DNA from: Bispira polyomma
Lineage: Eukaryota
DNA length: 64,000 bases
Assembly (NCBI GenBank): GCA_965649765.1
Contig: OZ287752.1
Span: 54,498,001-54,562,000, forward strand
Direction: 5' to 3'
A model generated the notes under the pieces. That model was not told the DNA's origin. It worked only from the letters and a program-made list of their open reading frames with translations, and did not search any database. The first letter of the stretch is position 1, and each line of letters begins with the position of its first letter. This document shows, piece after piece, positions 8,740-31,100 of this stretch. The translations under genes and the position numbers were made by a program.

Positions 8740-9013
8740 TAGGGCCACCTTTAACAATTTAAGTTCAGTCACTTAAGGTGACTTTAAATTACCTTAGGTT
8801 ACTAACTTTGTGGTGACCTTAAACCGAGGTCACCTTAGCACAAGTTAAGGTTTGATTCACTTTGTGTTGAATGTATAAAAGTATGTGGTCATCTGTGGTG
8901 ACCTTATACTAAATTAAAGTATTGTTAACTTACCAACTTTTTAGATAAAGTTAACTTTAAATACATGAAGTTAAGTCTAAATATAGATTTACTGCTCTAT
9001 TGAGGTGGCCCTA
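8740..9013. mobile_element. MITE-like non-autonomous DNA element
   Basis: Perfect 11-bp inverted termini tagggccacct (8740-8750) / aggtggcccta (9003-9013), the outer TA possibly a target duplication. Internal palindromes gtcacttaaggtgac and ggtgacct..aggtcacc. Confidence 0.7.
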
Positions 9014-9381
9014 AATATATAACTTTGAGAAATTGTAAAAATATAGATATATGTAAAGAAAAGAAAGAGCCCCCTTATGACCAGATGTGTTAGCTAATGG
9101 CTAAAACTTAACTCAAACTAGCAATAATTCTTCAGTCCATGCTACAGCATCACTTAGCTCACTAGAACCTTACATGACTGCGACAGCCCGTTGTTACATC
9201 AATCATCATGGCCAAACTATATTATGCAAACATATATTTTTCTCTTGACTGGCTGTAGTAATCCATGTTTGCCTTGCGTGCTTTTGGCTGCTTTGAGTAT
9301 TATTGGATCACTTGTTGGAGCCAGGGTGTGTGAAACTACAAACTACCTGTGAAATATAGTTTACAATGTTTAAACAAAACG

Positions 9382-9556
9382 CCAAATTAAAACGCAATAT
9401 GCAAAATTGTTACACTTTGATTCAAACTAAACCACTCTTTGTCAAATTACACCATCCCCCAAATTGCAACCTATTGTACCAAATTACTTCATATCCTTGT
9501 ACCATATTATGACACCACTTACCAAATTAAAATACAATGTGCCAAACTAAAACACA
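9382..9556 (+). repeat. Degenerate 20-bp-period array of a CCAAATT-like motif (all units)
   Basis: Motif at 9382, 9402, 9422, 9442, 9459, 9479, 9502, 9522 and 9542. Confidence 0.75.
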
Positions 9557-10822: not shown

Positions 10823-11027
10823 GGTGGTGGACTAGTGGTTAAATGTGTTAACTTTACAATCACTGGTCTCTCACTAAATTGGGTTCGAATCCTGCTTGTT
10901 TCTTTGGGTGGGGAAGTTTGGCAGGTACTTGCAAACAGGTCATTGCTTGCTTCAGGTACGATTTCTTCCACCATTAAATCTGGCAGTCATGATATAACCT
11001 AAGCGACGTAAAATCAAACTAAATTTA
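10823..11027 (+). mobile_element. tRNA-derived SINE, older diverged member (MetaSINE-like body)
   Basis: A box tggactagtgg, B box ggttcgaatcc. Shares acaatcactggtctctcac and the atataaccta..gacgt.aaa 3' end with the SINEs at 11277 and 18168. Confidence 0.75.
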
Positions 11028-11276
11028 AATACACACACTTGCCAGTAATTTAACACACTGCACACTTTCTTTTTGTAATTTTAAGGAAACACTAAACTTA
11101 ATTTTACGATTACCATATATTAATAGTCTTAATGCAGGGGCATGTGTAGAAGCTTGTGTAGAAGCCAGTACGCAAAAGCATACCAATTTTATGACAGAAT
11201 GAGCCCCCCCACCCCCACCCCACCCCCAACGAATTTATGTTAGTACAAAAAAAAACAAACATAATAGTTTGATACA

Positions 11277-11520
11277 TTAGCAAGCATTGCGCTTCACAAT
11301 CACTGGTCTCTCACCTCTGGGCGACGTGAGTTCGAATCCCGTCAATACCTATGTGGGAAAGGTGGTAGTTCTTTACTGTTGGCCGCTAGTTTCAGTGCAG
11401 AACCTTGATCAACTGTATGCAGTGTTTCCTCCAGCGTTTCCAACTACCCGTCCCAATATAACCTAAACAGGTACTAGAGTGGACGTTAAATATCCAAATT
11501 AAAAAAAAAAATAAATAAAT
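11277..11520 (+). mobile_element. 5'-truncated tRNA-derived SINE
   Basis: Highly similar over ~220 bp to 18188-18420. B box gagttcgaatccc present, A box lost, A-rich tail. Confidence 0.88.
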
Positions 11521-11639
11521 ATAGAAGTAAAACATTAACATTAAATTGGGGTATACCAAATGAAAAATCCTAACTACTCCCCTGTAATGTTATGGAAACT
11601 TTAACATATGAATTGCAAAAAAATGGGTTTGTCCAATTT

Positions 11640-12099
11640 TTACCTAATATTAGGTCGATTAAGCACCTTTGGTTCACATTAGCGATACTCTTTCTTCAAT
11701 AGATGTAAAATCATCAATTTAATTGAACTGAAACAAGCTTTACAGGAAATGTGGAAAACTTTACCCAATACTTTGGAGGCGAATGTTCAAAGCCTGCCTC
11801 GAAGGATGGCAGCTAATGTACAGACCAAGGGGACAGACCAGAGGCTTTGATAAAAAATACTGAAAAAATTAGCTTTTTTAAAAATATCATTGATTTGGTT
11901 TGTAACTTAAATTTAACAGTTGTGAAGTTTGTTTTAAATGTAGTTTACTGTAACTGTGACAACTGTAATGCAAAGAAAACTTTTAAATGAAAATCATACC
12001 TACATACATATATATTAACAGATAATGTCTCAAATTTATTAAAGACTTATATATATAAAATTTGTTCAAATCTAATCTACCATTTTTAGCAACGCTGTA
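11640..12099 (+). mobile_element. Tc1/mariner transposon right-end remnant
   Basis: Translations PNIRSIKHLWFTLA (degenerate SPDLNPIEHLW) and ELKQALQEMWKTLPNTLEANVQSLPRRMAANVQTKG (Tc1 C-terminal SMPRR..V..KG). Ends in ...caacgctg-TA (12090-12099), like a Tc1 CAG terminus with TA target. Confidence 0.8.
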
Positions 12100-14177
12100 T
12101 ATAATTCTAAACTAATTTAAAGGAAAATTCAATTTTTTTATCTCACATTTTCAGCTATTTACTGTACTAAAATCAGGAAGTACATTTATCCTGCCCTATC
12201 TCTTTTAAGACCCCTCTCTTCTGTCTTTCTGGGGGGTATTGAAATGGAAAGATTTGCAGTACCCAAACCCAGTGGCATTAATAGGTCTAAAGCCCCAACT
12301 CAAATTGAGATAGAGTGTCCTGTGACGGTTTGATCCCCTCACTTGTAAAGTTCAAATAGCTGAAACTTGTGACTTCCAACTGCAACTATCTTACTGTGGG
12401 TGATTTCAGCTTTGCCTACCTGAGCATTTCTGGTGTAGTTGTTGCCTATGTATTTGTCGTTCTTGATATTTGGTATTACATTAGAAAATATATAAGGAAA
12501 ATAGCACTCAGTAGAGTGCAAACCTCAACCAGGGTGGTCCAAAATCCTAAATAGGGATGTGATTTACTTAGTTATAGACCTAAACCCGCCTGAACTCAGC
12601 CATCTCAATAGTATAATGCAAAGTAGATCAATAACTTATTTGAACAAATCACCCATTTCTTAGTAGTTCTTAGTAAGATTAGGTAAACCCTCATATATAT
12701 TGAATACTCTGTTCAAGATTTGATGACTTCTGTCTTACCCCACTATAGGATTTAACCAAAATTAGTTGAGCAGTATTTGTGTAATGATGCAGAAATTTTG
12801 GTCTTACTGAACTTCAGTTATCCTACAGGGTTATTTCTCACTTATTGGCCTGGTGGTGCCTTGGTGGAGTGAACCACTAACAAAATTTGTCCTAGACTTT
12901 CACAAATGTTTTGCATAAAATCTGTGATTACCTCAGTGAGATTGTGGTGGTCCAGCCAAACGCAGAAAAATAAAGTATGGATCAGTACAAAAAATGATGA
13001 GAATATGGAAAAATTGTAATCTGGCACCATTCACCTTATTTTTTGTGTGTACAGATTTGGTAAGGTGTTTGTGGATTCCCTAACGGTGGCCCTGAAATTT
13101 AGTAAGATGCTACTACTGATAAAACGAATAAATGGTGAATCACAGCAACTTGTAAGGACAGACTAAGGTATATCTCCATGGTTTCCTAAAGCATATATTT
13201 TATTAGGATACCAGCATTTGTTTTCTTGCACATTCACCACTCGGGTTGTGACCTAATTGCTTGCAAGTATTATCCTATATGGTGAAGTTTAAGTTACTTC
13301 TTTGACCTTGCAGTGTGTGAAAGGTCACGTTATATGAGTAGGGTAAGTTATGAAGCTGCTGCTTCTATATGCAACTTTCTATATGTGTCATTTGAAGGTT
13401 TAAGTAAAAGTGACCAGCAATCTGTATCTGTTAGGTGATTGGTTAATGTAGAGTAATCAATTGGTTGGCAAGCAATTTTACCTTAAAGCTCTATATTTTA
13501 GTTACTGAGGTGCCATTCCACTATTATTACAACCTTAGCAATCAGTAAAAAATTTGCTTTCAATCCCAAGTCCAACTATCATGGTTTTAAAACCAGGTTG
13601 ATTGTGGTTTTAAAACCATAAATTGCCTTGACCGGGCCTCCAAGCCATGGATACAACCCTTGTGAAACCATGGAGCCCCCTAATGATCACAGGCAGATGG
13701 CTTCCACGCTGGAAATGTTGGGCATGCTCAAAACTGCTTTGGATCTTTCACGGTGAATCGTATCAATGATTAACCACAGTGATACACACTGATTAGCCCT
13801 AATCGCAGTCACAAACCTCATCAACCCAAATTAACCATGATTGGTCTGGGTAAAGTCTGTGTTGCTGTTGTCTCAAATGTACAAGCATTTGTCTTACTTT
13901 ATGACACCCCCGTGACACCCTGATTTACCAAGGTAAGCCTGGTAAACCCTGACTGGCAAAACCATAGATCAACCCCTCATTTGACCCTCTATATCCATTC
14001 CCACGCCATCAGAGTTAGTGTACTTTTTAAACGATCTCTCGCGAAAATGATACGCTGTGTATGGTGTGAATGATGGCATTATTGCCAATATGGAAAGTGA
14101 CTGCATTGCTCCCTAATGTAAAGTTGTTGAGGGTTTTTAATCTTTGAATTTTAAGTACTAATCTCAAGTAGCAGTAG

Positions 14178-14308
14178 TTTAGTATATATTTAGTATTTCT
14201 GTCTATCTGAACAACAATTCCTTTGCAAAATCCCAAAATTTAGTATTTAGTATATATTTAGTATATCTGTCTATCTGAACCACAATTCCTTTGCAAAATC
14301 CCAAAATT
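14178..14308. repeat. Local tandem duplication, 63-bp block x2, period 68 (also 37472-37602 and 60026-60156)
   Basis: tttagtatatatttagtat.tctgtctatctgaac.acaattcctttgcaaaatcccaaaatt at 14178 and 14246, with 2 mismatches. Confidence 0.92.
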
Positions 14309-15954
14309 AATTTATGTCTTCCCTGAGCAATATGTATGAAACTTATGTAAAAACTGTGCTAGGATTTAGCTAAATCTTGATATTTTACCATTTATCCTTC
14401 CCGAGAAGAACACAAGAACAATTCCGTTTTTGTGATTACCAAATCAGTTAATATCTTAACTAAGCAAAACATATCAACCTTTAGACAAACCTAAGCCAGG
14501 ATTTGGTTAGAACCATACATCTGGCATTATGTCCTGCCAAGGAATGACATTTAGTAAATCACCAAACCCAACCATTAAACATATGACTGACTTATGTGAT
14601 ATAGAGTAACACGTGACATGTTAGCAGACAGTGTAATGACTTGAGAGGTCTCTCTACTGACGTGCTAGTGTCATTGTCTTTATGGGATATATATGATATG
14701 TGTGGGAGTTATCAGATGGTTCTTAAACTCATACTCAAAACCCAAAGCTCACATACATAGACTTTCTTATGTAATTGATATAACCTAACCATGTTACCAT
14801 GAACCTTTGAGTGAGGCATTCAATTATGCAGTCCAGTTTTAGATGTCTTTATTATACACAGAGATACTGCAGCACATGTAATGATACATTCTTTTCTTAA
14901 ATTTAGCACATTTATAAGGACCTTCCCCTTGGGAGATAGGTACGGGATGTTAGTTTATTAGTGTAATGGGGATGGAGACAAAATTGGCCTTGTAAGAAGT
15001 TATGTAGACAGGCATGATAGACAGTTTGGGATAGCACGAGATATACTGGGCCAGCATCAGTTTTACTGGCAAAGCATTTCAGCATTTTCAAACAGTCAGT
15101 TCAGCAAGTGAAATTAATTGCTAATGCAAAAATATGTCACTTAAAGTTCTAAAATTTGCAATAATATATTTATCAGATATCATACAAGAAGAATGGTTCA
15201 GTGTTTGTCCTACATTTCTTTTGCATACTTCAGGACAAAATAAGCCAGGTATGTAAATACATGTACATGTAACCTAAGACATTGGATGACTTGACTTTAT
15301 CACTAAGTCATGTGGTCATCCTGGCCTAGTTGCTAGGGAGTTGGTTGGGTTGTGGATAAGACCCAGGGACTTAAACTGTTAATTTCTGTGGTCATCTAAG
15401 CCACTATGTGTCTGCCTGTTCCTGCTAGCCCTAGATTGGGATCGTACCCATGTCCTTGGTACTTGTAAGTGAGTGTGTTGCCCGATTAGTATTGTATTAT
15501 ATATATTGACATCAGTTTGGAACTCAAACAGTTGTACTTTTTAAGTAGCTTTAAACATTCAGGTACAATGAACTTTTTTAACAAGGTCGCAAGGTAAAAT
15601 GCTATTGTTTAATTAATATGGTTAAGTTATCAAGCCTGCAACTTTTAGCAAGGCTAACTGTGCTTATGGTGTGTAGTAAGAGATTTAACTGGTGACCCTT
15701 ATTGTTGGCTATTATTGTCATGGTCAATAATCTGAAGAAATGTAACCAGAATTTACTCAGAAACAGATACTTCTGAAACTATAGCCATCGGTCATAGATA
15801 CATAAAGATAAATGAATCAGATTCTAACCATGTCTGCGAGATTACTTGTTATCTTGGACTAGTTGATTTATTTGTCTAGAACATTACCTTACAATAACAG
15901 TAATTAAGGTACCAATATCTATCGTAACATAATAATTGACACCAAAATAGATTA

Positions 15955-16150
15955 AATTAGATATTTATATCTTGCATTGAACAATAATGTTTTAATTGCA
16001 GATTTAAAACTTGACAGTTTTTTCAATTTGTCTGATGTTAATTGGTAAGCTGTTCCAAAGCTTAGGGAGCACTGTATGAAAAAATATTTATCGTTAGATG
16101 TTTTGTGGCTGCTAGCAGCAAAATTAAACAAAATTACAAATCCCATTTAC
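15955..16150 (-). mobile_element. Highly decayed CR1/L2-like LINE 3' end (copies at ~39249-39444 and ~61801-61996)
   Basis: Minus-strand translation ends KLKKLSSFKSAIKTLLF, resembling the LINE ORF2 terminal SFKxxLKxxL motif. Little other support. Confidence 0.45.
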
Positions 16151-16760
16151 ATGAATGTAATTGAGGAATGGTAACATTTTTAAATGTGATTGATAGATTT
16201 ATCTAACACATTTTTACAATATGTTTGGATACAATATATGTTAAATGATAATGAGAAACAATTGATAGATTGCATTGCTTGTCATACAACATCACGTACA
16301 TACGAATGTAGGCTGAGGTAAAATTCTCCAAATAGCTCTGCGAATCCATCCGAAGTATTCAATAATGAGTCTACCTGTTAAAAGCACTGACACACTGTTC
16401 TAGTGTATGCCACTGTCAAGGTCATACATCTATCACATATTGTGGAATATAACACACTAATGATCCTCTAACTGTTGAACTGTCTTAGTCCAAAGTCACA
16501 GAAACCACTAAGGTCATGGCCACCAGGAAGATACAGAATAGAGTCAGGATGTAACTGGTAAAAACCAGTTTACATCAAACTCAGAGTTCAAAACTGAGAG
16601 AAGTGAACCCTCCTGGTGGCTATTCTATTGTCTCAGTCACTTATTGTGTACTTATGCGCCATTATTGATGTCAGCTATATCTTCAAATGGACAGCATAAA
16701 GCTCAGGGTATATAAGGTAACACGTAAAGCTATATATGTTACAGCGAATTACATTCAGTC

Positions 16761-16840
16761 AGTGATTTCGCAAAATCCCTGATACATAATGTACTTTTTA
16801 CACTTATTGAATGGCTTTTAGGGAATTTGTGAAAGACACT
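16761..16840. repeat. 80-bp element with ~20-bp imperfect inverted ends (mini-MITE or hairpin; all units)
   Basis: agtgatttcgcaaaatccct versus reverse complement of 16820-16840, agtgtctttcacaaattccct. Confidence 0.55.
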
Positions 16841-18167
16841 AATTTTACTTTCTAGTTAGGAAAATACATTAGAATCCAAAGTGAGCGAATTAATAATAAA
16901 GTCATAAATTATTGTGGGGTAATATGTTTTTAATCATTTTGTGAGTTCAGGAGCATCTGGTTCTGTAGAATACATATGAAACTTTCTGGGAAAAGACATA
17001 CTTTAAAATAAAGACTAAATATAAAATTCAACCAGAATATTTGAACATACAGTGAGCATTTGCATGTATTCATTAAAAACTTAATACTCAGGGGACAGTT
17101 TTATATCAATTTTCCACAATTTTAAGTTACTTTACCATTGGAGCATATGACTACATAAGCATTGCTGGTCATCATAAGACTAATTGTATTATCACATCTT
17201 GGCCAAGGCTATTCATCCCCAATGGTGGCATTACCAGGCACACTAGTGCCACTCAAACGCCAGCCAAGCTTCTAGGCCACTCTGCCACACTTCATGTAGT
17301 TTTGTGATAGACATGGTTATACTTTTTGTATTTTGCTTTTGTACTGTGAATTTATATGTACACATTGTGAAGAATTTGATGAAAAAGAAAAAAACAAATA
17401 AATTCTATTTCAGCCTCTAAAATATATCTAACTATGTATAAACAGAACTATGGCAAGTACGCGATGGAGTTATGAATAGCTATTTCCATTCACAGAATTA
17501 GGCAAAATAAGAAAAAATATTGAGTTTTTTAGTTTTTTGTCTGCGAGTCAATATAGGTTTACTGGTACAGTTCACAAACTAAATTGGCCAGACAATATAT
17601 TCCATTATGCACTGGGAGTTGTAAAAGTGTTTAACAATAAACTTCTGGTATGGGATTATTATCTTATTCATTGAATTTTTAGCATGGGTATTGTAGTAAC
17701 TTATATAGGTTGTAGAGAATCAAATATTATATCTTCGGGAAGACAAATAACTACATTTCTAATAGTTTCATAAAATCAACATATATCATATATTAGCTAA
17801 GAACATTTTACACACTAAAAACTGATAGAGATATAATACCAAATTTTCAAATAATTAAGCATTTTAAAGTGTCTGATTAAATGGTGCAGACATATGCGAA
17901 TTGCACGGTTATATTATCATTTAATAAATGTACTGCTGTCTAAAAATCTTTCACTTACTTTAATCAGTTGCTGTTTGTTTTTTGTTACAGTAACATGGCG
18001 CAAAGTTTAGTAATGTGTCAAATTGGACAATTCTGAATCTGTGAGTATACTCCTTCAGATACAAACAAACTGTAAACCAGCTCCTCCAATCATCCTTGTC
18101 CTAAGCTACCATGACTCTCAGAAGCAGTAAGGAAACAAGAGACCACCTGTAGAAGTATTATTTTTAT

Positions 18168-18420
18168 GGGCCGTGGTGGCCTAGTGGTTAGCAAGCATTG
18201 CACTTCACAATCACGGGTCTCTCACCTCTGGGCGGCGTGAGTTCAACTCCCGTCGATGCCTATGTGGGAAAGGTGGTAGTTCCTTACTGTGGGCCCCTGG
18301 TTTAAGTGCAGAACCTTGACCAACTGTATGCAGTGTTTCCTCCAGCGTTTCCAACTACCCGTCCCAATATAACCTACTAGAAGGTACTAGAGTGAACGTT
18401 AAATATCTAAATTCAAATTT
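18168..18420 (+). mobile_element. Full-length tRNA(Leu-like)-derived SINE
   Basis: A box tggcctagtgg 18177-18187, B box gttcaactc 18241-18249. The segment gtctct...ggcgtgagttc resembles the tRNA-Leu variable arm/T arm. Possible low-complexity TSD tatttttat at 18159-18167 and 18429-18437. Confidence 0.88.
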
Positions 18421-19397
18421 AAGAGACATATTTTTATCAGAACCATTTATACAGTCCTATAAAGTGACAATGGTCGCCATAGGTAGGCAATTGATGTTAT
18501 TCGATGGTATAACCTGTATTACATTGCTGGAGGATAGAACCTGGGACTTTCTGATCACATTGCCCAACTCTATATCCACAAGGCTATGGGAGACCTGCGA
18601 CTAAACCATAATATCAACATATATATCCTGGTATATCTTTGACATATATTTTTTGTATATATTTAAATTCAAGAAAGAGTTCTGTTTAAAAGTATTGTGA
18701 CATTCTTGGCCATTTAGATAAATATTGAAAACCATTCCGTGGTAATTGAGGTTAAGCATAAATGTGAGTTTAAAACCTTTCCAAAATATGGCCTCTGATA
18801 ACTTTGACCCACTATATCCAAAATACAAAACTGGTTGTTTCAAGTAAAGGTCCAAATGTTCATAAAGTAATGTGAATGATAAAATTTACTCTACATTGAT
18901 AAAATTACTGTTGTGTGGCCTATGTGTATATACATGATTAGAATGAAATTATATTAGCAAGCTAATATATCATTTATTGTAAAATGCGCTTTTATTGGAA
19001 AAAATTATTATATGCATATATACTAGTTATATTATATAGACATTTCAATGATATCTACTAAAATATAGCACAGAAATGCAACAATAAATAGTATTGGGAT
19101 GATAAGGTCAAAATTAAAGGTCAAAAAGACTCAAACCGAGGTCAAAGTATGAAAACTGCCGCAAATGGTGTGATCAGGGAATAACAACAGGTAATCATTA
19201 CAGTGTGGTTAGAAAGTATATAGCTCAATATAACACTAACACGTGCACGCTTCGACTTCTTTCCTTACGACTTTGCTATATCCATGGACTTAATAATTAC
19301 ATCAATGATTCTGCTGTTACGCTTTAGAAGATGCCTAGCATCAATAAAGAGTGTTAAAAATTCATAATAATAGTAATAATCAGAACTAAAACAGAAT

Positions 19398-19455
19398 TTT
19401 ATTCAAGATATTTGGAGCATTATACGATTTTATTACATACATTCGGGAATTTATT
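19398..19455 (-). terminator. Three candidate polyadenylation signals for the orphan gene
   Basis: Minus-strand AATAAA (plus-strand TTTATT) at 19450-19455, 19429-19434 and 19398-19403, ~280-335 nt after the stop, followed by T/GT-rich sequence. The hexamer is common in AT-rich DNA. Confidence 0.45.
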
Positions 19456-19731
19456 TAGGAAAGTGATATCCTTCTTCAATGATACAAGTAGACTATTCAG
19501 GTATAGAAAGGTCCTTTTAGTGTACTTGTATATATCTACAAATATCTTCAAAACACAACATGCAATAAAACAAATCCAATCTACAGAGAATTACTACTCG
19601 TATCACATCGAAGGTTATTTAAGAAACATCCAATTAATTAATTGTGACTTATTGTGCTACTTGATAAAAAATAAAAATAAATATTGATTGGTTTGATGGG
19701 TTGAATGTTTGTGACCCAGACACCTTACGGT

Positions 19732-20331
19732 TTAGGACACATTGTACTGTATCCTGTCGAAATTGTCTGTCATGAACCTATTCAAGGGAGGCTCCAGTGA
19801 GTTAATGATCTCCTGAAAGCAAATTTCTGCAGCAACCATATAGCCCTGCAACTTCAACTGTTCACGGATGTAGTAATCAATGGCCAGACATGTAAACACA
19901 AAAGAACTAATCAAAAATAGCCACATCAAGCGAAATGTTGATTCCTCTGCTGATTTTTCCTGTGACACCACATCCATGCACTGGTTCGCCTGGATAGAGA
20001 ATTCCAATTCCAGGATGTTGCCCCAATCCAGCTTGCATGTGTACAGCTCTTCCGCCTTCCCATGGTGTAACACCCAGATTTTAAACAGTCTTCTGATAAG
20101 TATCCACAGCCACCCAAATAGGTTGTTGTCACCTCGGCTGTTCCATTCATGTTCGGTCCCACAGGTTAGGCCATATACAAACTTGCCAAGTATTGTCAAC
20201 ACTCGTCGTTGAAGTATGATTTCACAAGCACGATCGGGTGTATCCTGACTAAATGCATAGTACGAAATCATGCAACCAATTACCACTGCTAAATACCTGA
20301 ACAGTAGAAGTTGTTTTCTAGTAAATGTCAT
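19732..20331 (-). CDS. Intronless 199-aa orphan membrane protein (signal peptide/TM, 4-Cys region, TM, ~45-aa tail), copy 1
   Basis: Longest ORF in the unit by far. The track starts at GTG 20337; the first ATG is at 20331 (gtgaagATG). Hydrophobic N-terminus LLLFRYLAVVIGCMISYYAFS, Cys38/59/101/120 (track numbering), second hydrophobic segment LMWLFLISSFVFTCLAI. Visibly less AT-rich than the flanks, with promoter-like and poly(A) signals correctly oriented. No family recognised. Confidence 0.75.
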   Translation of the reverse strand: MTFTRKQLLLFRYLAVVIGCMISYYAFSQDTPDRACEIILQRRVLTILGKFVYGLTCGTEHEWNSRGDNNLFGWLWILIRRLFKIWVLHHGKAEELYTCKLDWGNILELEFSIQANQCMDVVSQEKSAEESTFRLMWLFLISSFVFTCLAIDYYIREQLKLQGYMVAAEICFQEIINSLEPPLNRFMTDNFDRIQYNVS

Positions 20332-20362
20332 CTTCACTTGTGCTACTATGATAATTAAGCAA

Positions 20363-20462
20363 AACTGACACGTATCTATGTAAAATGGTTTTTGTCGTCA
20401 TAAGTTAGCAATCATGACGTACACAACGTCACACCATGACGTATGTATCCATTGTGACGTCA
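20363..20462 (-). promoter_or_regulatory. Candidate promoter: five CRE-type TGACG sites plus TCAGTT initiator
   Basis: CGTCA 20396-20400, TGACGTA 20415-20421, ACGTCA 20426-20431, TGACGTA 20437-20443, full TGACGTCA 20455-20462. Minus-strand TCAGTT at 20368-20363, ~32 nt upstream of the ATG. No clear TATA box. Confidence 0.6.
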
Positions 20463-20783
20463 TTTATGCCTTCTCGTTTATTCTCACATGTGAGGACAAT
20501 TATAAGTACATTTGACTATGTATGACTCCATCTGTTGCAGAATTATTCTATGATTAGTAGCAGCATTCAGAATTTTCACCAAGTAGTATGTCGTTGTTGT
20601 TTTATATTTCAAATATGAACTAGAATCTAGTTTAAGATATTCTAAACATAGAACATATAAAGACGTTTGAACAAAAACAGAACAGGCGATTCAGCTAGAA
20701 GATGACGTATGTGTTTGTAGTTTGTCCCTTAATATTTAGGAAAGCAATATTGATCACATAAATACATCTAGTTAAGGGATAAT

Positions 20784-20901
20784 GTTGGTGAGTTAGTCAG
20801 GTACTTGCCATAGGTGAGTGGTTTCTTCCGCTATTGAATCTGGCTTTCGTGATATGAGCTAAGCTGTTAAAAGCGACGTAAAACGCAACTAAATTCAAAT
20901 T
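20784..20901 (+). mobile_element. SINE 3' fragment (unit 2 copy at 44078-44195)
   Basis: caggtacttgc...tttcttcc...aatctggc...gatat...gcgacgtaaaa...aactaaatt matches 10922-11025. Confidence 0.7.
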
Positions 20902-21892
20902 CTTATATGTCACTATAATAAATAAAAAATAGTAAAAAATATAATGCAAAATTGCTTTCCACAGAAATAACCATGTTTTGTTATGTTTTCTTTTTCTGAG
21001 TCTAGCCAACTTCCAGTTCCTTTAATCAATGGAATGGAAACTGTCAAAAGTTTAATTCAGGGAAATTGCAGGTTTTCTTAGTGAAAAGTTCCAACAGTAG
21101 AAAATTTTATCTATGGTTTTAGAATGATTACTAAAAATAATTATATGTTTCTCATTAATGGTGTTTATGGATACTTTCAAAGATATTTTGCCATTTAGCC
21201 CATTTTATAATGCATTCTGTCAGTGTACAAAAAGTAGACCCATTGGTCTGATTGGGTATACTGTTAGTGCATTTTATTGTACTCAGATCAAAGCCTGGGA
21301 AATTCCTAGCTAGTTGTTTTTTGGGATATAATCCACTACAAAACCATATAATCATGACCCCCCCGCCCCCCCCCCCCCAGCCCCCAACCCCCCTCTGTCA
21401 GAGAGTAATAAATTAAACTACTTAACCAACCACAAGAAAGGCATTAAGTGAATCCTCATAGGTAACATTATGTATCATTGTGGTGTTCTTTTAATTGTGG
21501 TTTAATCTTTCCATCTATCCAAGCTCTTAATGTACAATGGTAGTATGTAGTACATAGGGTGTATCCAGAGGGTGTCGAGGGTCCAGGCCCCAGAGCCGGG
21601 CTCCGGGTCCAGGAATACCTATCTAGGGGGCAAGGCCCCAGATACAGGGGATGGTCCAGGGGCTGACCAAACATGAATAAAACAGTCAAATTTCAACAAT
21701 TATGTTAACAATATACTCTAAGAGTGAACCCTCCTCTTATAAGCACCTAGATCCGATACATGGTGTATTTTAGCATATTAACTGTACCCAAGTGTATATT
21801 AAAGTTTAAATCATCCTCTTTAGAGGTATAGTCCGTTACCAAATATACCAAATAGGGGGTAACTCAGCATTGGTAAAATAATGTATTCTCAG

Positions 21893-22033
21893 TATTTGAA
21901 TTTAGTTAGGTTTTAGTGTCACCTTAAAAAGTTTCGAGTTTATATCAAGATGGTCAGACTTAATGATGGAAGAAACCAGTGCTAAAGCACTTTAAACCAC
22001 CAGCTTATGGCAAGTACAAACTTTCCCACATGT
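21893..22033 (-). mobile_element. SINE 3' fragment, minus strand (unit 2 copy at 45171-45311)
   Basis: Reverse complement reads atgtgggaaagtttgtacttgccata...ggtttcttccatcattaagtctgacc..gatataa...aactaaattcaaa, the same family as above. Confidence 0.7.
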
Positions 22034-25000
22034 TTCTTTGTCAAATGTAATAGGTACACTATTGTACATGGAAAATAACCATTCTGTCACATACTTATTA
22101 TTAAAAAATTGCATTTTGTATGTGTAAAACAACAGCTTAAATCTATATAGTTTGGTGTTTTCTTTTCTGAAAATGGAAGAAACAATTGTGTTTTATCTCC
22201 AAATATCACAAACCTCCTTTCTCCTATCAGACTATTCTTTTGCTCATTGTTTGGAATATGCGCCACAGAGGATGCCTGGTCATCAATTGTGGAACTATAG
22301 AAGTCAAAACATTAACATTAAAACATATCTTTCTTTTTGATATTTTGTCCTCAGTTTTTGCCCTTAACTATATGTGTACTCTGATAATCCCATGAGTGTA
22401 AAAAAGGCTAATATTGGTACATTGTTTTGTTTTACAATTTTAAGCTCCATTGTCAGGCTATCATATTATATAAGTACATTTGTAATACCTACTCATAATT
22501 CCTGTCAGAAGGAATCTAGGCCATGCATTCATTGGGGATTACCCCACTATCTAACTATATGCATTACATATCATTGACGCCCCAAAAAGGCATCAATTGC
22601 CTGAACAATTTTCTTTAAGTGAGTGTAATAGGATTACCTTACTTTTACACTTGTATGTATTTATGCGGTGGTGCTTTCTAGCTTGTATTATAACAATATG
22701 TCCGATAATGCCATGTACAAAAATAAAATTCTCTTTTTTTACATTGACCGTATACCAACTTTCAAAATTTCACTATAATTTTTCCCTCATTCTATGATGC
22801 ATTTTTTCCAGTTTATCCATTCAATATGGCTGTTACAATTGTTACTTTCAGAGTTTGGTGTTAAATCCTGGGAGGGATTTGTACATATAGCAAAATTATT
22901 TTCATTTCTTTTTTTATTAAAACAAAAATCATCTCTTTCTACACGATTTGATATGTTAAGATATTAATGTAATCTTTTAATGCAATACAGGTTATATGGC
23001 TTATTTAACGATAACAGAACATCCATGACGAGGTGACCAAACATGGTTAAATAACAGAAGTCTGCTGGTGTATCCTACAAATATGAAACATTACTTGGCT
23101 ATTCCTGATCTCACGAGAGGTCATTTCTGGGGAGGGGGGGGGGACAATTTCGAAGTTAATTAATTTATTTTAAATAATGCTTTTATATATTACTGTTCAA
23201 ACATATTTAACTTAAAAAATAAGTCTGATATGGGAAGAATTTTAAGCAGTACATGTGAGTTTATTTTTGCCTGCAAAATGAGACATTTGTGAGGTGGGTC
23301 AATTAACTTCAGATCACCTGCCCTATCTTTAAAGCCGCCATGCATATGTAGTAATGAAAAAGGTGCTTTCTGTTCATTCTGTTTTTTTAAATAAATGCAC
23401 ATGTAAAAATGAATCACACAATAAATTGAAATTGCAAGGCACAGCAATCAACAACAAAAAGTAAATATTAAGTCAACCACAGACATAGGAAGTTTATTTG
23501 GCACCTGCTAGTCTCTGATTTGCTTTTTATTTCTGGTTACCAGTCACGTGATTAGTAAATAGAATAGTATTTGTGAAGGTCAAACATACGAAGAAAAAAA
23601 AGGTCTAGCAGAAATGAAAGAGAAAAGTATCTATTTAACCCAAATATTGATAATATTTATTTGTGCTTAAGAACATATTTATTTTCTGAATTTCTCTCCC
23701 AGGTCACCATTCATATTTCTCTTTCTATAAAACGTAAACCTGAGTAGACTTTGATTTATTTGTCCTACAAAGTTCTGTATACAAGTCCAGATTACTCCAT
23801 CAAGTGTTTGACAACCACATACACACAACCACTGTAGGTCCCTAGCACTTCCTTGCACTCATTTGTCTTCACAAACTGGTGAGATCTGACCATGGACAAC
23901 ATTCCTCAGTCGTCGAGTGGATTATTTACGCAACTTTTATCTGAGCTCTCTAACTTCTGAGCACTTTACCAGTTACTAGCTACTAAAAAACTACTATATA
24001 TCGAATCTACAGTTTTATTTTATATCAATCAATCTCTTTCTGGTACAATTCTGTAACAGAGTAGTATGCAAAAACAGCTTTACAATTTCTATATTTCTAT
24101 CTTAACATCACACATTTGGTAATATTAGTTTTCAATTTTTATAAACACGTATTTCATGTTGTACATTTATGAGCATTTGACGATAATGATATTTTAGAAC
24201 ATACATTCAAAAGGTAAAAGTGTATTTTACATGCACAAGCAAAATTCAAACAAAAATATAATATTTAATGGCCAAAAATGTTGATCAAAAGTGTTTTCGT
24301 GGTACTATTAAGTTCTAAATCTATTTTAAACATCACTAATATTTGCCACAAAAAAACATAGATTTGAAAGAACACTGAAGATAAACATGTACTTTAACAA
24401 ACATAAATATTTCATGTGTATTAATTAAATATTAGTCAAATATATATATTTTTTAAAATTTTGAAGCTAAGTAAAGGAAAAGAGAGTCCAGATTTGATAA
24501 AATTGCCCTACTTTTTGACTGATGAACTTGCTTATCAGTTATTACTCATTCAATATCACCTAACATTTCACAACACACACAAGACCCCCCTTTCAGTACA
24601 CAACCGTGAGAGCCACTTAGTAATTCCACCCACCAAGTGAACTGACATTTAATTACCATATAACTTCATAATATTTGGTAGAGAAGCTGAGGTTTTGAAT
24701 GACAGCTGTAATGAAAGCATTGAGCTAGGCTTTCACCATTATACAAAAGCTTGAGAAACCTATTTGTCCCAGGTTTATATAGGTTTACAACAACATCATG
24801 CTTCTTGTTCATCAACTTTCAGCAAAATATGCAATCTTTTGGCATTTCCTGTTACATTGCCAAAAAACACCTTCTCTTTCAAAAATATGGAAGTTACAAA
24901 GTCAAAATACAAACATACGCAAAGCTTTACCCAAACATACATTGCTGCATATCAAACGTATAGTGGTTTTTAGCAAATGATGAATGATTAAATTTTGCAC

Positions 25001-26897
25001 AAAATGTGTATGACCAAAGCTTCCGATATTTGTTAGGGTGTTCTCTACTTGAAAATAGAGTGGCGTTATCCGGTTCCCAAACCTCACCTACTTAGATTAC
25101 ATCCTTATTGTACAGTTATACTTATACATATATAGTTGTGTCTAAAATGCCATTAATTCTAAGATCCTTTTTAAGATTATTGGAAAATAGTAGACACATA
25201 TTTCAATCGGAAAGTGCCAGGTTTAATTTAATTATTGTAAGACTACTTGGGGTTTATACAAATTCATTACGGAACATAACACCATAGCAATATTTTATAT
25301 GTTTACATATATCATAGACATACGCACAAATATACCATATAATATAGACAATGTGTCGAAAAACATGGATGGTTACTACTGATTGTTCAACATGTTTGGT
25401 GCTTTTAAAAAAAACTATGTTTTAAAACGTTATCACCATGTGAGTCATAAATCTTAAATATAACCTTACTATTAGTCTTGCTGAACAACAAAAGATTGTT
25501 TCAAACATTATAGCTTTGTTTTACTATATTTCAAACCACAAGAGTTATAATTCATACCACAAGACTCAGTTACTGCTATGGTAGTCATGATGATAATACT
25601 GACATACAAGTTAAGAGAAGTAAGTCAACTATAACACCTTAGGTAAATGTAAACTATATCTACTAAAACACTTGTCGTCCAGCACAGAATGAATGACAAC
25701 AATAACTATTTATAATATGTCTGTGAAGTTCACTGGTATCTGTACATTATCTGAGATCTTGACATATAAAAACCATTCTTATTTCTGTAGACAAGTTTCA
25801 TTTTTCACATTAGACCAAATGTGCCGCTACATGTATTATTTACAATTATGCTTGTTGCCTACTTCTAGTTAAATCTGTATAGAATCATTGCAGTCCACGT
25901 GCACCGCCCTCCAAAATGGACGCTATTCGCCCCCCCTCCCCCCAAATGACCTACTTATAAAACAGCCCATTGGTTGAAAATATCCCCTGCCTCCCGTTCT
26001 CTTAGATGAATGATTTCATAGTCCTGTCCCTCCAGCATGGCCGCCATTTGTTTATTTCCCCTACTTATATAACAGCCCATAGGTTGAAAATATCGTCTGC
26101 CTCCTTTTTTCCAGGCCGGCAGCTTTCTCAGTCTCTTCCTGTTCCCTATGGACCACTATCTCCACACTTTCTCTGGGTGACAGGTACCTGAGATTGACCA
26201 CATCTACTGGACAGTTCAGACTGTCTAGCCTGGCATGTAAACTAGCCTTTCTGGTCTCGGGATTGGGTTGTTTCAAATCCATTCTGCACTTTTTGTTGTA
26301 CATATTACTATCACCTTTAAGAAGAGATAAAACAGCTTTTTCTGTTAACAATATTGTTATAAATTCACAACCACACTGAACAAATATTTTTATACTATAC
26401 ACTTGCAACAGTATTTTGCACAAGTTAAATTTTCTTGTAGTTTAATTATATTTTTACGAACAATCCCTGAAACGTTTGTTCTCTAGCATTAAACAAATGT
26501 TGTTTTTTTTTATCACAATTGTTTGTTTAAATAGCTATCTATCTAACTTCTATTTAGTTTATTCTTAAATAAGCTACCAACACCACACGATGTTCGAACA
26601 TAGACACTCTGATTTACTCAGAGCATTGTGCATTGATGGAGCATAATATATATGAAACTGATGGCATTGATGGACACAAGAGTAAGTAATGAGAGTTGAG
26701 TAAGACATTCAGCCTTCTTCACAAAACAAAAGCATGACTGGATGTGTTCATCAAATTACTGATTTATCTGGACCACATTTCTGCTTCCTTTCAAAGACCT
26801 CTGGGTGTAAATTGACCTTAGCATAATTTTTACTTTTCCTGGTTGAGCATTGCAAACTTGGACAGATTCCCTATAGTGAATATGGGAGTACTATTTA

Positions 26898-26901
<4 letters not shown>

Positions 26902-26937
<36 letters not shown>
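26902..26937. repeat. (AT)18 microsatellite
   Basis: Directly visible; same locus in unit 2. Confidence 0.98.
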
Positions 26938-26939
<2 letters not shown>

Positions 26940-27306
26940 GGTATTCTTCTCGCTGGGGTCATCCGGGTGGTTAGATAGGCTAGGCTAATATTCTCAAAAA
27001 AAATTGTGAGGCAGAGGAAATTCACATTCGATACAAAAGCCAAGGTGACACTTACGTCTAGCAATAAGTAATTCAGTAAAGTGGTATGTTCGCTTAACCA
27101 TGATCAACATTACAACCTTACTGAAAAATAATGGGCGTTATAATCCTCTTGGTGAGCATTCTGAATATCTATTTTTTTTTTTCAAAATGACTGTCAAGTT
27201 GTAGAAATTGGTTTAGTGTTGGTATTAATAGAAACATCATTTCATTAAAAAAAGGGATTATAATTCACACAAATTAAGGCAATTTTTGATACTAAATAAA
27301 TAATAA

Positions 27307-27617
27307 TTGTAATGATAGTTGTCACCTGATATAGTTATGAACAACACTGTTATTTAATGTGCTATGACATTATTACCCCACCCTGGGTTCTTCTACTTGT
27401 CAAATAATAGTTCACTCTCAGCTCCCTTAGGGAGAATACTGGCCATGCCGCCACACATACAGAGCACAAACACCACTTTAGTGGCCAGGTACCCATTTAT
27501 ACACGTGGGTAGAGAGGGACAACTTCGTGCATATTCCAAGGATAACCAGGCCAGCAGCGAGCATCGAATCTCGACCTTCACATCCAAAGTACACTCTAAC
27601 CAATAGGCCACAGAGTG
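27307..27617 (-). mobile_element. CORE-like SINE (unit 2 copy)
   Basis: Copy of 4485-4795. Confidence 0.75.
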
Positions 27618-27621
27618 GTTA

Positions 27622-28182
27622 TAATAATAATAACAATAAATATATTATATAGGGTTCAACTGGTACATAAGAAAAATAAATAAAAAAATTCTGTGTTCTC
27701 TGGCGCTTGTCTTCTGAAATAAATGAGCTTTTAGCTGTTTGCTGAATAGGTTGTGGCTGTCTGTTTTTCTGAGGTAGTCTGGATGAGAGTTCTGTGAGTT
27801 TGACCCAAATACAGTAAAACTACAGTCAGCAAGTGTCGGAACATCCAATAGATAGTAGTGTTTTTTTTCATCTAACAGGATAGTCGCAGTTTTTTTTTAT
27901 TGAATTCGATTCTGTTAATATCTCGGTGCTTTCTGGTGAATACATTTATGGACTGTTGTCAAAATTGAAACAAAATTCTGTAGCGAATTGGAAGCTAGTG
28001 GAGTGTCTTTAGTGCTCTTGAACTACTAGTGTTATTTGTCTTATTTTAGCACATGCTTTGCTGCTGCATTTGGCAATTTTTGCATCATTTTAGTCTATTT
28101 CTCAGGCAAGGCCATAAAGATATCATTGCAGTAGTCCAGATGGAATAGAACAAGGCCATACACTACTTGTTTGCATTCTTTT
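27622..28182 (-). mobile_element. L2/CR1 LINE remnant (unit 2 copy)
   Basis: Copy of 4800-5360. Confidence 0.9.
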
Positions 28183-31100
28183 GCATTTGCATTTAAACAA
28201 TTTAAGTTGTTAATACAAAAAAATGTGTCAGAGGCACTAACAGTGGCATACTTACAATATAAACTATTTTGTGAATATCAATTAATGCTGCACACACTAA
28301 TAGTGATATTCCATTAATTCCCATTGAACGAAAATATCCGGCAAAACATCACCCCCATCTTGTATATAAGGATTATCAATTGGGCCAAGAAGAACCATCC
28401 ATCATTAGATTAGAGTCTTTATCAACGAAAAGCAGGATTTTTTGTCTCCTTTTTTGTTTTGTTTTATTACACCCCACAGCAGCTGCAAAACGTTATACAC
28501 CCCACGATGACTCTCTGAAGAGACAAGGAGAATCAACAAAAAAATGATTTTATTGTTTCTAAGCAGCATTGAACCCTACCAATACACACAGGTGTTTCCC
28601 TTCCACCAATTTATCACACTTCCCCATAGACATCTAGCCTTCACTAAGGCTCAGAATGTGCCAGAAGGCCACATATAGAGATAGCTATTTTGTATAAGAG
28701 ACCTAATGGCTTTAACATTCGCTTATGGGTGGTCTCCTATGGTCTACTGGTTAGGAATTTGGTCTGATGAGCAAAAGGTCCCCAGTTTGACACCTAGTTG
28801 GCGGAGTTGGTCTGTTGAACAGGATATACTGCCAAAGTTGCAATGTCCATTTGGGATAACATTCGCTTGCAAGATATGAACACGTCATTGTTTACTGATG
28901 ATGTTGACCAAGGCTATGCTGTAGGATTATCCATTCTGTAGAATCAGCATCATAGAGGGTGATATCTCAATAGGATGTGATATAAATGTTCAATAATACT
29001 AAACTAAACATGAACCCAGGGAACCATTTAAAATGATGATCCTCTGTCACTTGGGTCTCATTCCCAGTGGCAGGCTTATAAGGACCTTGTGGACATTGAT
29101 TAATGGTGTCATCTTCAAGTTGCAGTCTTCAGGTAGGTTCACAACTTTGCAAGAACTAGAATTTAAACGCATCAATTGCAACATTAATTGGCAAAACTCT
29201 TTAATTTTGCCAGATATATTACTTTGGGGGTAAATAGACTTTGACTGAATGGCATTTGAAATAGGTCGTTCTAGTTTGTAAATACAACACACTGTGTATA
29301 TGTAATTCTGCAGTACAGTCACAGCCAACAACCAAAAGATGAGGCCATTGCATTATTAGAATAGGGAGCATGGTTGTGACCAAATGAAGATAATGGAACA
29401 GTCTGTCTCCCAGTACATAAATACACCTAAACCAATTAATAATTTAAATTGACCTACCCACTAAAAATGATGGTACAATAATAGCATACATTGTGTACAG
29501 CATTATGGAGTGGATGGCATTTTGGGTTTTCAACATCTTAAATGAATGCCAAGCAGCTTCATTGTAATGATGTTAATGGTTCTTGGGGCGCTGCTGACAA
29601 CCTGTGATGCCTGATAAAAATTATTGGTATTTGTATTTACAGTTACAGTCCGTGCAGTATCGGTCATTATCTGCCAACCTGACGATTTAGATGAGGTAAT
29701 AAAAATTTGGCCCAAAGGTCAAACAGGTTTTTTGGTGTAGAAGCAGTTTTGACCTGTCTGTTATTAATGTTTTAATTCTGTTTGGTTTAGTACTAACATA
29801 GATTGATGTATATTCTTTTTCTTACTGTCATTAAATTGGTACGCTTGGGTGTACTGGCATTACTGCTTGCTACACCCCTGTAATAAAAGAGATCTCAGTT
29901 TTATCAGCCGAACAATATCGATTTTAAGAGCTGATAATGTCATTATCAGCTGTGAATGATAAATATGCACAACTAAGGAGCCTGTATTGACATGATAATC
30001 TGTTAGTAGCGCCCTGCTTACTGGTATCATAGTATTTATTATACACCTACTAATATTGTATATACCATAATGAGTGATAATATTGAAAACCTCAATTTAT
30101 ATATATTAACACAAAATTGTCAAAAATACATTGTCAAAGTATCTTGTACAAGTGTGGGAAAAGCGTAAGGAAATTTGATCTAAACAGTTGTTTCAAGGTT
30201 GATTTAGAATTGGTTACATACATGTATAACAAAGGATTTATGAGTATATAATATGACCAGTAAAAAATGTATATGTGTTTAAAGTGACATATAAGCCCAA
30301 AAATTGTATTTTTTTTTAATTACATGTCACTATAATAAAAAATATATATCTATCTGCATCACTTAACGCCCCAAACAAGGCTAACAGATAGGGTGGCATT
30401 GATCACACTCTTAAAAAGGACGTTTTTAAGTTCCAAAGTCCTGGGCTCCTATTTATCAAAGACTTCAGGTCTAATCATTCTACTTTATTTTTACTGTAGT
30501 TATTTATTGTTGTTGAAAGGAATCGTATTTTAAGCAGTTAAATGATACTAAAGAGCTCAAAACAAGAATTTACTATTAGTATCACTCACCTAGAGAATAA
30601 AGCTTGGCAATACTTGAAACTGTGTTTGTTCTGGAGTGACAAAAAAAAAAAATAAATGTAATTAATTTATTTGTGAATTTTGTTTTGCCAAAATTCCAAT
30701 AAAAGAACAACTATACCAAGCAAATGCCAACAAATCTTAAACCTAGTATGTTTAAACACCTACATTTATATGGAACAGTACATTTTGTACCAAAATAAAT
30801 ATGTGACAGTTTTTATTTCTGAAGTTTCCAGATGACAGCTCTCCAATGTGCAAATCTAATGCACCTACCAATGCCCTAAGGCCCCAAAAAAATGAAAATA
30901 AAATTCTTGGATCTGCCTGGATCACCCAACGAAGTGTCATGTTTGCTGTAAACAAACGGTGAAAACAAATCCTTATTGGCTGATGTACTAAAGATATAAC
31001 ACATTCTGTCACCTGGCTTTTAAAAACAACTTAAAATGACCGACTACACGACACAACAAATATGTATATATAGCCTGCTCCCGACACGACATTACACAGC

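What the first reader, a model, noticed from the sequence alone, without database searches (positions are those of the whole stretch)
19732..20331. Unrecognised intronless membrane protein with a 4-Cys ectodomain and a Trp/basic amphipathic helix
Seen: N-terminal hydrophobic stretch ending A-F-S|Q-D (signal-peptidase-like site), four cysteines (C38, C59, C101, C120), a Trp/Arg/Lys-rich segment LFGWLWILIRRLFKIWVL, a second hydrophobic helix (137-153) and a tail ending YNVS. Inference: a type-I or two-pass surface protein with two possible disulfides and a membrane-interacting helix. Candidate roles include gamete recognition/fusion, allorecognition/immunity or a captured viral membrane gene. 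I recognise no family, so function is speculative.
Basis: partly seen in the sequence, partly recalled or inferred. Interest (0 to 1): 0.8.

Follow-up and report, generated by a model that had tools for sequence, protein, structure and literature searches.

The report
Orphan membrane-protein gene in tandem array
The open reading frame is real and encodes a small membrane protein with a two-disulfide outer domain; it belongs to a tiny unnamed family with no described relative, sits once per unit in a 23-kb tandem repeat, and its function is still unknown.

Summary
The ORF is far longer than chance allows (221 open codons against 121 +/- 18 simulated) and has GC3 of 0.51 on a 0.35 background. 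An exhaustive HMMER search of 1.84 billion proteins found seven unnamed relatives (E 1.5e-21 to 1e-6), and a profile search found an eighth. All are 140-241 aa, and seven of the eight share the full layout: N-terminal hydrophobic segment, four conserved Cys, YGL[ST]C, ELYxCxLxWG, FS[VI]xA..C, second TM, variable tail. One member lost Cys36 and Cys118 together, which suggests C36-C118 and C57-C99 disulfides. Pfam, NCBIfam, PHROGs, PDB (sequence and fold) and BFVD gave no match. A second intact copy lies at 43026-43625, differing by four changes, all non-synonymous and all in variable columns. Upstream is a CpG-rich patch with a tight TGACGT cluster. Verdict: a real single-exon gene of an undescribed family. 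The architecture is well supported; surface recognition is only inferred.

The parts
19732..20331 (-). Coding sequence, copy A: 199 codons plus TAA stop, ATG at 20331-20329
   Evidence: relatives match this frame at E 1.5e-21 and by tblastn
20251..20310 (-). N-terminal hydrophobic segment (residues 8-27), a signal peptide or signal anchor, preceded by MTFTRKQ (+2)
   Evidence: Kyte-Doolittle 19-mer maximum 1.78; flank charges; present in all full-length relatives
19936..20247 (-). Luminal/extracellular domain (residues 29-132) with Cys36, 57, 99 and 118. Conserved blocks are 34-59 (..C..LQxRVL....YGL[ST]C) and 93-118 (ELYxCxLxWG....FS[VI]xA..C)
   Evidence: alignment A3; block identity 49% and 47% against about 20% elsewhere; beta-alpha-beta-alpha-beta-beta in the AF2 model, pLDDT 61
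20068..20121 (-). Trp/basic amphipathic helix LFGWLWILIRRLFKIWVL (residues 71-88)
   Evidence: hydrophobic moment 0.37-0.56 with W- and K/R-rich character in all members, although only 20% identical
19867..19935 (-). Second transmembrane helix (residues 133-155), ending in the juxtamembrane motif IDYYIR
   Evidence: Kyte-Doolittle maximum 2.01; negative flank before it and basic flank after it in most members; a long helix in the model
19735..19866 (-). Variable C-terminal tail (residues 156-199), inferred to be cytosolic
20396..20462 (.). Cluster of CRE-like bZIP half-sites (TGACG/CGTCA), including one full palindrome TGACGTCA at 20455-20462, 65-131 nt upstream of the ATG. A TATA-like CATAAAT on the minus strand lies at 20462-20468
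   Evidence: Of 39 half-sites in 64 kb, 6 fall in the 250-nt bin 20251-20500, 6 lie upstream of copy B, and every other bin has at most 1
20338..20800 (-). Relatively CpG-rich upstream region (CpG o/e 0.88 against 0.36 for the unit), the putative promoter
19398..19455 (-). Three AATAAA signals 277-334 nt past the stop, candidate polyadenylation signals; repeated below copy B at 42692-42749
43026..43625 (-). Coding sequence, copy B: intact, with 4 nucleotide differences from copy A, all non-synonymous (T>A, I>M, E>K, V>M)
43720..43756 (.). CRE-like cluster upstream of copy B, with one TGACGT site fewer than copy A
1..22831 (.). Tandem unit 1 (phase arbitrary, cut by the window start); carries copy A
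   Evidence: self-BLAST
22832..46109 (.). Tandem unit 2 (23,278 nt); carries copy B
   Evidence: 41 substitutions in 19,035 aligned nt against unit 1, 0.215%
46110..64000 (.). Tandem unit 3 (partial); its ORF copy would lie beyond the window end

Best explanation
This is a real, single-exon protein-coding gene of a eukaryote. It is the founding visible member of a small, undescribed family of membrane proteins of about 140-240 aa. The protein enters the secretory pathway through its N-terminal hydrophobic segment, which is either a cleaved signal or a signal anchor. It exposes a roughly 100-residue domain on the luminal/extracellular side. That domain is held by two disulfides (most likely C36-C118 and C57-C99) and built from two conserved strand-rich blocks plus an aromatic/basic amphipathic helix. 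A second helix anchors the protein in the membrane and leaves a short, fast-changing tail in the cytosol. The gene sits once per unit in a head-to-tail array of at least three ~23.3-kb units that differ by about 0.2%, so it is a multi-copy (ampliconic) gene. It is probably driven by a CpG-rich promoter carrying a tight cluster of CREB/ATF-type bZIP sites. Shown here: ORF reality, family membership, conserved architecture, the array and the motif cluster. Inferred: topology, disulfide pairing and promoter use. Inferred and weakest: that the conserved outer domain is a binding module for a partner at the cell surface (recognition or adhesion), and that amplification reflects selection on dosage or rapid turnover, as is typical of reproductive or immune surface genes.
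For: ORF length is z = 5.6 above simulation, GC3 is 0.51, and it is the only long ORF in the unit. Seven relatives were found in an exhaustive HMMER scan and an eighth by profile search. All pairs are mutually significant at 25-53% identity, all are contiguous ORFs starting with MA, and all sit on contigs of 0.4-2.6 Mb. G54, C57, Y97, C99, F111 and S112 are invariant; Y53, L55, L101, W103, A115 and C118 are nearly so. Conservation is concentrated in residues 34-59 and 93-118. One member has Tyr at both the C36 and C118 columns. Flank charges follow the positive-inside rule for N-in/loop-out/C-in. The AF2 model built on the family alignment gives a beta-alpha-beta-alpha-beta-beta domain and then a long TM helix. 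The four differences between the two window copies all fall in variable columns. The tandem units carry unit-specific indels. The TGACG/CGTCA cluster and CpG o/e of 0.88 lie upstream, and AATAAA signals lie downstream. No LTR or TIR flanks the ORF and no TE domain occurs in the unit.
Against: There is no expression evidence of any kind. They could therefore be paralogues in a few genomes rather than orthologues across many. The structure model is of low confidence (pLDDT 61, pTM 0.28), so the fold and the helix packing are tentative. All four differences between the two copies are non-synonymous, and the ORF carries about 3 times the unit's substitution density (4/606 against 41/19,035; P about 0.04, post hoc). 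The recent copies therefore show no sign of purifying selection. The array could be inflated by mis-assembly. Function is inferred from architecture alone.
Confidence: 0.7

Rival explanations
1. The family is real, but the copies in this array are silent, recently amplified passengers on their way to becoming pseudogenes. The array would be a macrosatellite whose unit happens to contain the gene.
For: All four differences between copies A and B are non-synonymous, and the substitution density in the ORF is about 3 times that of the unit. No transcript data exist. Nothing else in the unit is recognisable.
Against: Both copies are intact over 199 codons and keep every invariant family residue, and the four changes fall in variable columns. 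The upstream region keeps CpG (o/e 0.88) in a CpG-depleted unit (0.36), as unmethylated, active promoters do.
Confidence: 0.15
2. The ORF is cargo of a mobile or virus-derived element, a captured viral membrane gene or a transposon ORF, and the family spreads with that element.
For: It is intronless, small and membrane-bound, with a patchy, sparse family of eight unnamed ORFs. Dense CRE-type sites also occur in some viral enhancers (own knowledge).
Against: No LTR or TIR surrounds the ORF. No transposase, RT, integrase, capsid or polymerase domain occurs in any ORF of 50 aa or more in the whole unit. There is no match among predicted viral structures (best E 0.47) or in PHROGs. All relatives sit on 0.4-2.6-Mb contigs. 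No relative was found in JGI metagenomes or GTDB genomes. The viral contig collection itself was not scanned (see referred steps).
Confidence: 0.06
3. The ORF is the terminal or sole coding exon of a larger spliced gene. The true protein would then have further N-terminal exons, or the transcript would differ from the reader's ~1-kb model.
For: There are no transcript data. One relative (P0003) starts only at the YGLSC block, so its upstream part may lie in another exon or be lost.
Against: Seven of eight relatives begin with Met-Ala, a few polar residues and then the hydrophobic segment, which is a complete N-terminus in one ORF. The window ATG has A at -3. A promoter-like patch lies directly upstream.
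Confidence: 0.05
4. It is a chance ORF with no coding function.
For: There is no Pfam, PDB or literature match.
Against: Its length is 5.6 sd above simulation, GC3 is enriched, and eight relatives share a conserved Cys/aromatic pattern at E down to 1.5e-21.
Confidence: 0.02

Closest known systems
The eight unnamed ORF products P0001-P0008 (ENA assemblies; no name, no Pfam)
   Same: Seven of the eight share the same size class and order of parts: N-terminal hydrophobic segment, the four Cys (one member lacks two of them), YGL[ST]C, ELYxCxLxWG, FS[VI]xA..C, second TM and variable tail. P0003 begins only at the YGLSC block. Identity to the window protein is 24-40%.
   Different: Three members (P0005, P0007, P0008) carry a longer tail with its own conserved motif. 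P0006 lacks the second hydrophobic segment. None is described anywhere, so they give no function.
Small sperm-egg fusion-associated type-I proteins of vertebrates (IZUMO1 / SPACA6 / TMEM95 superfamily)
   Same: They are small single-pass proteins whose disulfide-bonded ectodomain does the work, with fast-evolving, germline-type genes. The resemblance is recalled from memory.
   Different: No sequence or fold match to any solved structure. The predicted domain is beta-alpha-beta-alpha-beta-beta, not a four-helix bundle plus Ig-like domain.
BST-2 / tetherin
   Same: About 180 aa, with a hydrophobic segment at each end and a Cys-bearing ectodomain between them (own knowledge).
   Different: Here the second hydrophobic segment is followed by a 44-residue tail, so it is not a GPI signal. 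No coiled coil is predicted, and there is no PDB match.
Intronless genes carried in macrosatellite or ampliconic arrays (e.g. DUX4 in D4Z4; DUX arrays reviewed in PMC13558733; TSPY-type arrays, own knowledge)
   Same: One intronless ORF per unit of a head-to-tail, nearly identical multi-kilobase repeat.
   Different: The protein is unrelated: a membrane protein, not a homeodomain or nuclear protein. The unit is 23.3 kb. Array size and expression are unknown.
Viral small membrane or fusion-associated proteins
   Same: Small size, hydrophobic segments and an aromatic/basic amphipathic stretch.
   Different: No match in BFVD (best E 0.47, TM 0.21), PHROGs or the 1.84-billion-protein library apart from Mb-scale contigs.

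Membership tests
Unnamed family P0001-P0008 | Significant full-length sequence similarity | tested here: met
   E 1.5e-21 to 1.3e-6 in the library-wide phmmer search; all pairs significant by BLASTP
Unnamed family P0001-P0008 | Four ectodomain Cys plus YGL[ST]C, ELYxCxLxWG and FS[VI]xA..C blocks | tested here: met
   Alignment A3: C57 and C99 invariant, C36 in 8/9 and C118 in 9/10 members. The window protein keeps all invariant columns
Unnamed family P0001-P0008 | N-terminal hydrophobic segment and a second TM after the domain | tested here: met
   (P0003 lacks the N-terminus, P0006 lacks TM2)
IZUMO1/SPACA6/TMEM95 superfamily | Four-helix-bundle plus Ig-like/beta-hairpin ectodomain detectable by sequence or fold | tested here: not met
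   The PDB profile search returned nothing at E up to 10. The best Foldseek PDB hit is E 0.81 and unrelated. The model is of low confidence, so the fold test is weak
BST-2/tetherin | Extracellular coiled coil ending in a C-terminal GPI signal | tested here: not met
   A 44-aa tail follows the second hydrophobic segment; the domain is mixed alpha/beta; no PDB match
Zonadhesin cohesin-like domain (Pfam PF22320) | Score at or above the Pfam gathering cut-off (26 bits) | tested here: not met
   12.4 bits, E 0.14, over TM2 and the tail only, and only in the window copies
Transposon- or virus-borne ORF | Terminal repeats round the ORF and element genes nearby | tested here: not met
   No LTR or TIR; no Pfam domain in any of the 118 ORFs of 50 aa or more in a full unit; no BFVD or PHROGs match
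Transposon- or virus-borne ORF | Relatives in viral genome collections | not tested
The protein-level library search found no relative outside the Mb-scale ENA contigs
Macrosatellite/ampliconic gene array (organisation, not homology) | Head-to-tail multi-kb units of near identity, each with the ORF | tested here: met
   2.75 units, 99.5% identity including indels and 0.215% substitutions; two intact ORF copies, with the third expected beyond the window
Macrosatellite/ampliconic gene array (organisation, not homology) | Array confirmed independently of the assembly, with expression of the unit gene | not testable with these tools
   Neither reads nor transcript data are available

The most novel reading that the evidence does not exclude
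The gene is an ampliconic, germline-expressed surface gene of a new fold, whose disulfide-clamped domain and Trp/basic amphipathic helix act directly on an apposed membrane or partner during gamete recognition or fusion (or in self/non-self recognition). It would be kept in a homogenised 23-kb array by dosage selection or genetic conflict.
Probability: 0.08. Interest if true: 0.8.

Novelty: new variant of a known kind. Interest (0 to 1): 0.4.

Why it matters
If expressed, this adds an undescribed protein family with a probable new small disulfide-bonded domain to the catalogue of eukaryotic surface proteins. It also gives an example, outside the well-known mammalian cases, of an intronless gene kept in a large, nearly identical tandem array. 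Gene annotation that depends on homology or splicing evidence tends to miss such genes: none of the relatives has a name, and the window protein itself is absent from a 15-billion-protein collection. Without expression or localisation data it remains one more orphan gene. Its value lies in being a well-defined, testable candidate, not in a demonstrated function.

Tried and rejected
Family and structure searches that gave nothing:
- The word-index protein search with the ORF found nothing; with P0001 it found only P0001 itself.
- Pfam gave only a sub-threshold Zona_CL1 hit.
- PHROGs and NCBIfam gave nothing.
- The PDB sequence and profile searches gave nothing.
- The single-sequence AF2 model was unusable, pLDDT 41.
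- Foldseek on the alignment-based model found no hit below E 0.4 against PDB or BFVD. The abalone VERL rows at E above 5 are noise.

Searches of the window and surroundings that gave nothing:
- A Pfam scan of all 118 ORFs of 50 aa or more in one whole unit found nothing.
- Rfam and ARAGORN found nothing on the window.
- A repeat search found no LTRs or TIRs round the ORF.
- tblastn of the family against the window found no further paralogue fragments.

Searches elsewhere that gave nothing:
- The 4-sequence alignment found no relative in JGI metagenomes or GTDB genomes.
- An exact 32-nt stretch of the ORF was absent from the metagenomes.
- Literature searches for array analogues and for family motifs were not informative.

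Other points:
- One of the four 8-residue motifs typed (the last) is not verbatim in any member.
- I rejected a chance ORF, a TE ORF and the antisense 110-aa ORF at 19880-20212 (+). The last is a by-product of the coding frame, because the relatives match the minus strand only.
- No contig looked human, and no spliced model was needed.

Full report
**1. The observation**

The minus strand holds an ORF at 19732-20337, 201 aa from a GTG. All described features are present:
- an N-terminal hydrophobic stretch ending AFS|QD;
- LFGWLWILIRRLFKIWVL;
- a second hydrophobic helix;
- a tail ending YNVS.

In ATG numbering the Cys are at 20, 36, 57, 99, 118, 148 and 171. Four of them (36, 57, 99, 118) lie between the two hydrophobic segments.

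The ORF is not a chance event. It spans 221 stop-free codons, against 121 +/- 18 (maximum 189) in 300 Markov simulations of the surrounding 23-kb unit. It is the only ORF above 120 aa in that unit. GC is 0.43 and GC3 0.51 on a 0.35 background.

**2. Surroundings**

Self-comparison shows that the whole window is 2.75 head-to-tail copies of a ~23.3-kb unit at about 99.5% identity. Substitutions amount to 0.215% (41 in 19,035 nt), and there are a few unit-specific indels of 154-482 nt.

The ORF therefore occurs twice in the window. Copy B at 43026-43625 is intact and differs at four nucleotides, all non-synonymous. A third copy is expected just past the window end.

Nothing else in the unit is recognisable:
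- none of the 118 ORFs of 50 aa or more in a full unit hits Pfam;
- there are no tRNAs or Rfam families;
- no LTRs or TIRs bracket the ORF;
- tblastn with the family finds no other fragments.

The sequence is eukaryote-like. It has almost no long ORFs, 35% GC, CpG o/e of 0.36, and a tRNA-derived SINE-like repeat. The species could not be identified. Nothing suggested human DNA.

**3. Flanking signals**

Upstream of the ATG, the 460 nt at 20338-20800 keep CpG (o/e 0.88) in a CpG-depleted unit. Between 20396 and 20462 lie seven TGACG/CGTCA half-sites, including a full palindromic TGACGTCA next to a TATA-like CATAAAT.

Of the 39 half-sites in the 64-kb window, six fall in one 250-nt bin here and six lie upstream of copy B. 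No other bin has more than one. TGACGT alone is found 20 times against 9.9 expected, with half of the hits in these two patches.

TGACGTCA is the CREB/ATF bZIP site (established knowledge). That it serves as the promoter here is inference. Three AATAAA signals lie 277-334 nt after the stop and are repeated below copy B. They are weak evidence in AT-rich DNA.

**4. Relatives**

The word-index search found nothing. Because the claim rested on the absence of relatives, I ran the exhaustive HMMER search. It found seven hits in 1.84 billion representatives, with E from 1.5e-21 to 1.3e-6, lengths of 140-241 aa, and none above 40% identity. A profile word search added an eighth.

All eight are single-member clusters from ENA. 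All pairs are mutually significant at 25-53% identity. The window's own protein is not in the collection.

The alignment (A3) shows these patterns:
- Invariant: G54, C57, Y97, C99, F111, S112.
- Nearly invariant: Y53, L55, L101, W103, A115, C118.
- Motifs: C..LQxRVL....YGL[ST]C, ELYxCxLxWG, FS[VI]xA..C.

Conservation by segment is 49% for residues 34-59 and 47% for 93-118. It is about 20% for both hydrophobic segments, the amphipathic helix and the tail. The helix keeps its character in every member (hydrophobic moment 0.37-0.56, rich in W and K/R) although not its sequence.

One member has Tyr at both the C36 and C118 columns and keeps C57 and C99. This paired loss argues for C36-C118 and C57-C99 disulfides (inference).

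The four differences between the window's two copies all fall in variable columns. JGI metagenomes and GTDB prokaryote genomes hold no relative.

I therefore could not see the organisms of the relatives, their neighbours or their DNA. No synteny or dN/dS test was possible.

**5. Protein architecture**

Flank charges follow the positive-inside rule. The stretch before segment 1 is +1 to +2 in most members, both borders of the middle domain are mostly acidic, and the stretch after segment 2 is basic in most members (IRR, IRK, YRRRQRDRK). This gives N-in (or a cleaved signal), domain out, tail in.

Whether segment 1 is cleaved is open. The window has a fair A-x-S site, but several relatives have none.

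AlphaFold2 on the sequence alone was useless, pLDDT 41. With the ten-row alignment it gave pLDDT 61 and pTM 0.28, with this order of elements:
- strand 34-38
- helix 40-51
- strand 55-59
- helix 71-88 (the W/basic helix)
- strands 95-103 and 107-120
- a long helix 126-179 through the membrane.

Each of the four Cys lies in one of the four strands, which is compatible with the pairing inferred above. The model is tentative. Foldseek found nothing below E 0.4 in PDB or BFVD. Sequence and profile searches of PDB, Pfam, PHROGs and NCBIfam were also empty apart from a sub-threshold Zona_CL1 hit.

**6. Best explanation**

This is a real single-exon gene for a small secretory-pathway membrane protein of an undescribed family. 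It is present once per unit of a young or homogenised 23.3-kb tandem array.

I take the conserved outer domain to be the working part, a compact disulfide-clamped binding module. The present data cannot tell these apart.

A role in cell-surface recognition is an inference from four observations: the architecture, the sparse and divergent family, the variable tail, and the amplification. I hold it with low confidence.

**7. Rivals**

- Silent amplified passenger copies. All four copy differences are non-synonymous, and the ORF has about 3 times the unit's substitution density (P about 0.04, post hoc). Against this are the intact ORFs, the kept invariant residues and the CpG-preserved promoter.
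- Element- or virus-borne cargo. No hallmark of any kind was found.
- An exon of a larger gene. The N-termini of the relatives look complete.
- A chance ORF. This is excluded for practical purposes.

**8. Comparison with the known**

In organisation it works like intronless genes embedded in macrosatellite or ampliconic arrays (DUX arrays, PMC13558733; TSPY-type arrays from my own knowledge), without any homology to them.

In protein architecture it recalls small single-pass gamete proteins (IZUMO1/SPACA6/TMEM95) and tetherin, from memory only. The tests for membership in either were not met. There is no support for a viral origin.

**9. Steps left out, and a slip**

I did not scan the viral contig collection with the family, because a match could have fetched DNA of a virus of animals. 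The library-wide protein search and the BFVD fold search stand in its place.

One 8-residue motif typed into the literature search was a blend that is not verbatim in any member. It found nothing and nothing rests on it.

**10. Verdict**

The tandem array and the eight relatives are new facts.

Novelty is a new, undescribed family of an ordinary architectural kind, in an unusual genomic setting. Interest is moderate (0.4). It is a clean, testable orphan gene with no demonstrated function.

Noticed in passing
window 1-64000: The whole window is 2.75 head-to-tail units of about 23.3 kb. Similarity is mosaic: units 1 and 3 are 99.97% identical over their first 3.7 kb, while units 1 and 2 are 99.5% identical there. 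This hints at gene conversion or unequal exchange, or at an assembly effect.
   Followed up: partly
window 11252-11517 and 18163-18430 (and the matching places in the other units): A tRNA-derived SINE-like repeat occurs twice per unit. It has box A/B-like motifs, and the first copy has an A-rich tail. The copies are 91-93% identical. ARAGORN and Rfam do not call it.
   Followed up: partly
window 25950-26111 and 26061-26423 (-): A 52-nt module is duplicated 110 nt apart and reads CCAAT...TATAAG on the minus strand, which looks promoter-like. It lies beside a 120-aa TTG-start ORF that is identical in all three units (3225, 26061, 49334). There is no Pfam match.
   Followed up: partly
window 3743-3978 (= 26579-26814), 30367-30848, 62936-63089: Unit-specific indels: 236 nt present in units 1 and 2 but not 3, 482 nt only in unit 2, and 154 nt only in unit 3. 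No obvious target-site duplications or terminal repeats were seen on reading them.
   Followed up: partly
window 4066-4115; 14173-14308: An (AT)25 microsatellite, and a 68-nt unit repeated twice.
   Followed up: no
window 21252-21416 (+), within 21294-21843: A GC-rich but CpG-poor island (CpG o/e 0.14-0.34) holds a short ORF with a proline run. Its nature is unknown.
   Followed up: no
window 19880-20212 (+): A 110-aa antisense ORF lies inside the coding sequence. The relatives match only the minus-strand frame, so it is taken as a by-product of the coding frame.
   Followed up: yes
proteins P0005, P0007, P0008 (relatives, not in the window): A subfamily with an 85-91-residue tail carries its own conserved motif (..LI..AY..RP..RGIADALP), which is absent from the window protein. 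P0006 lacks the second hydrophobic segment.
   Followed up: no
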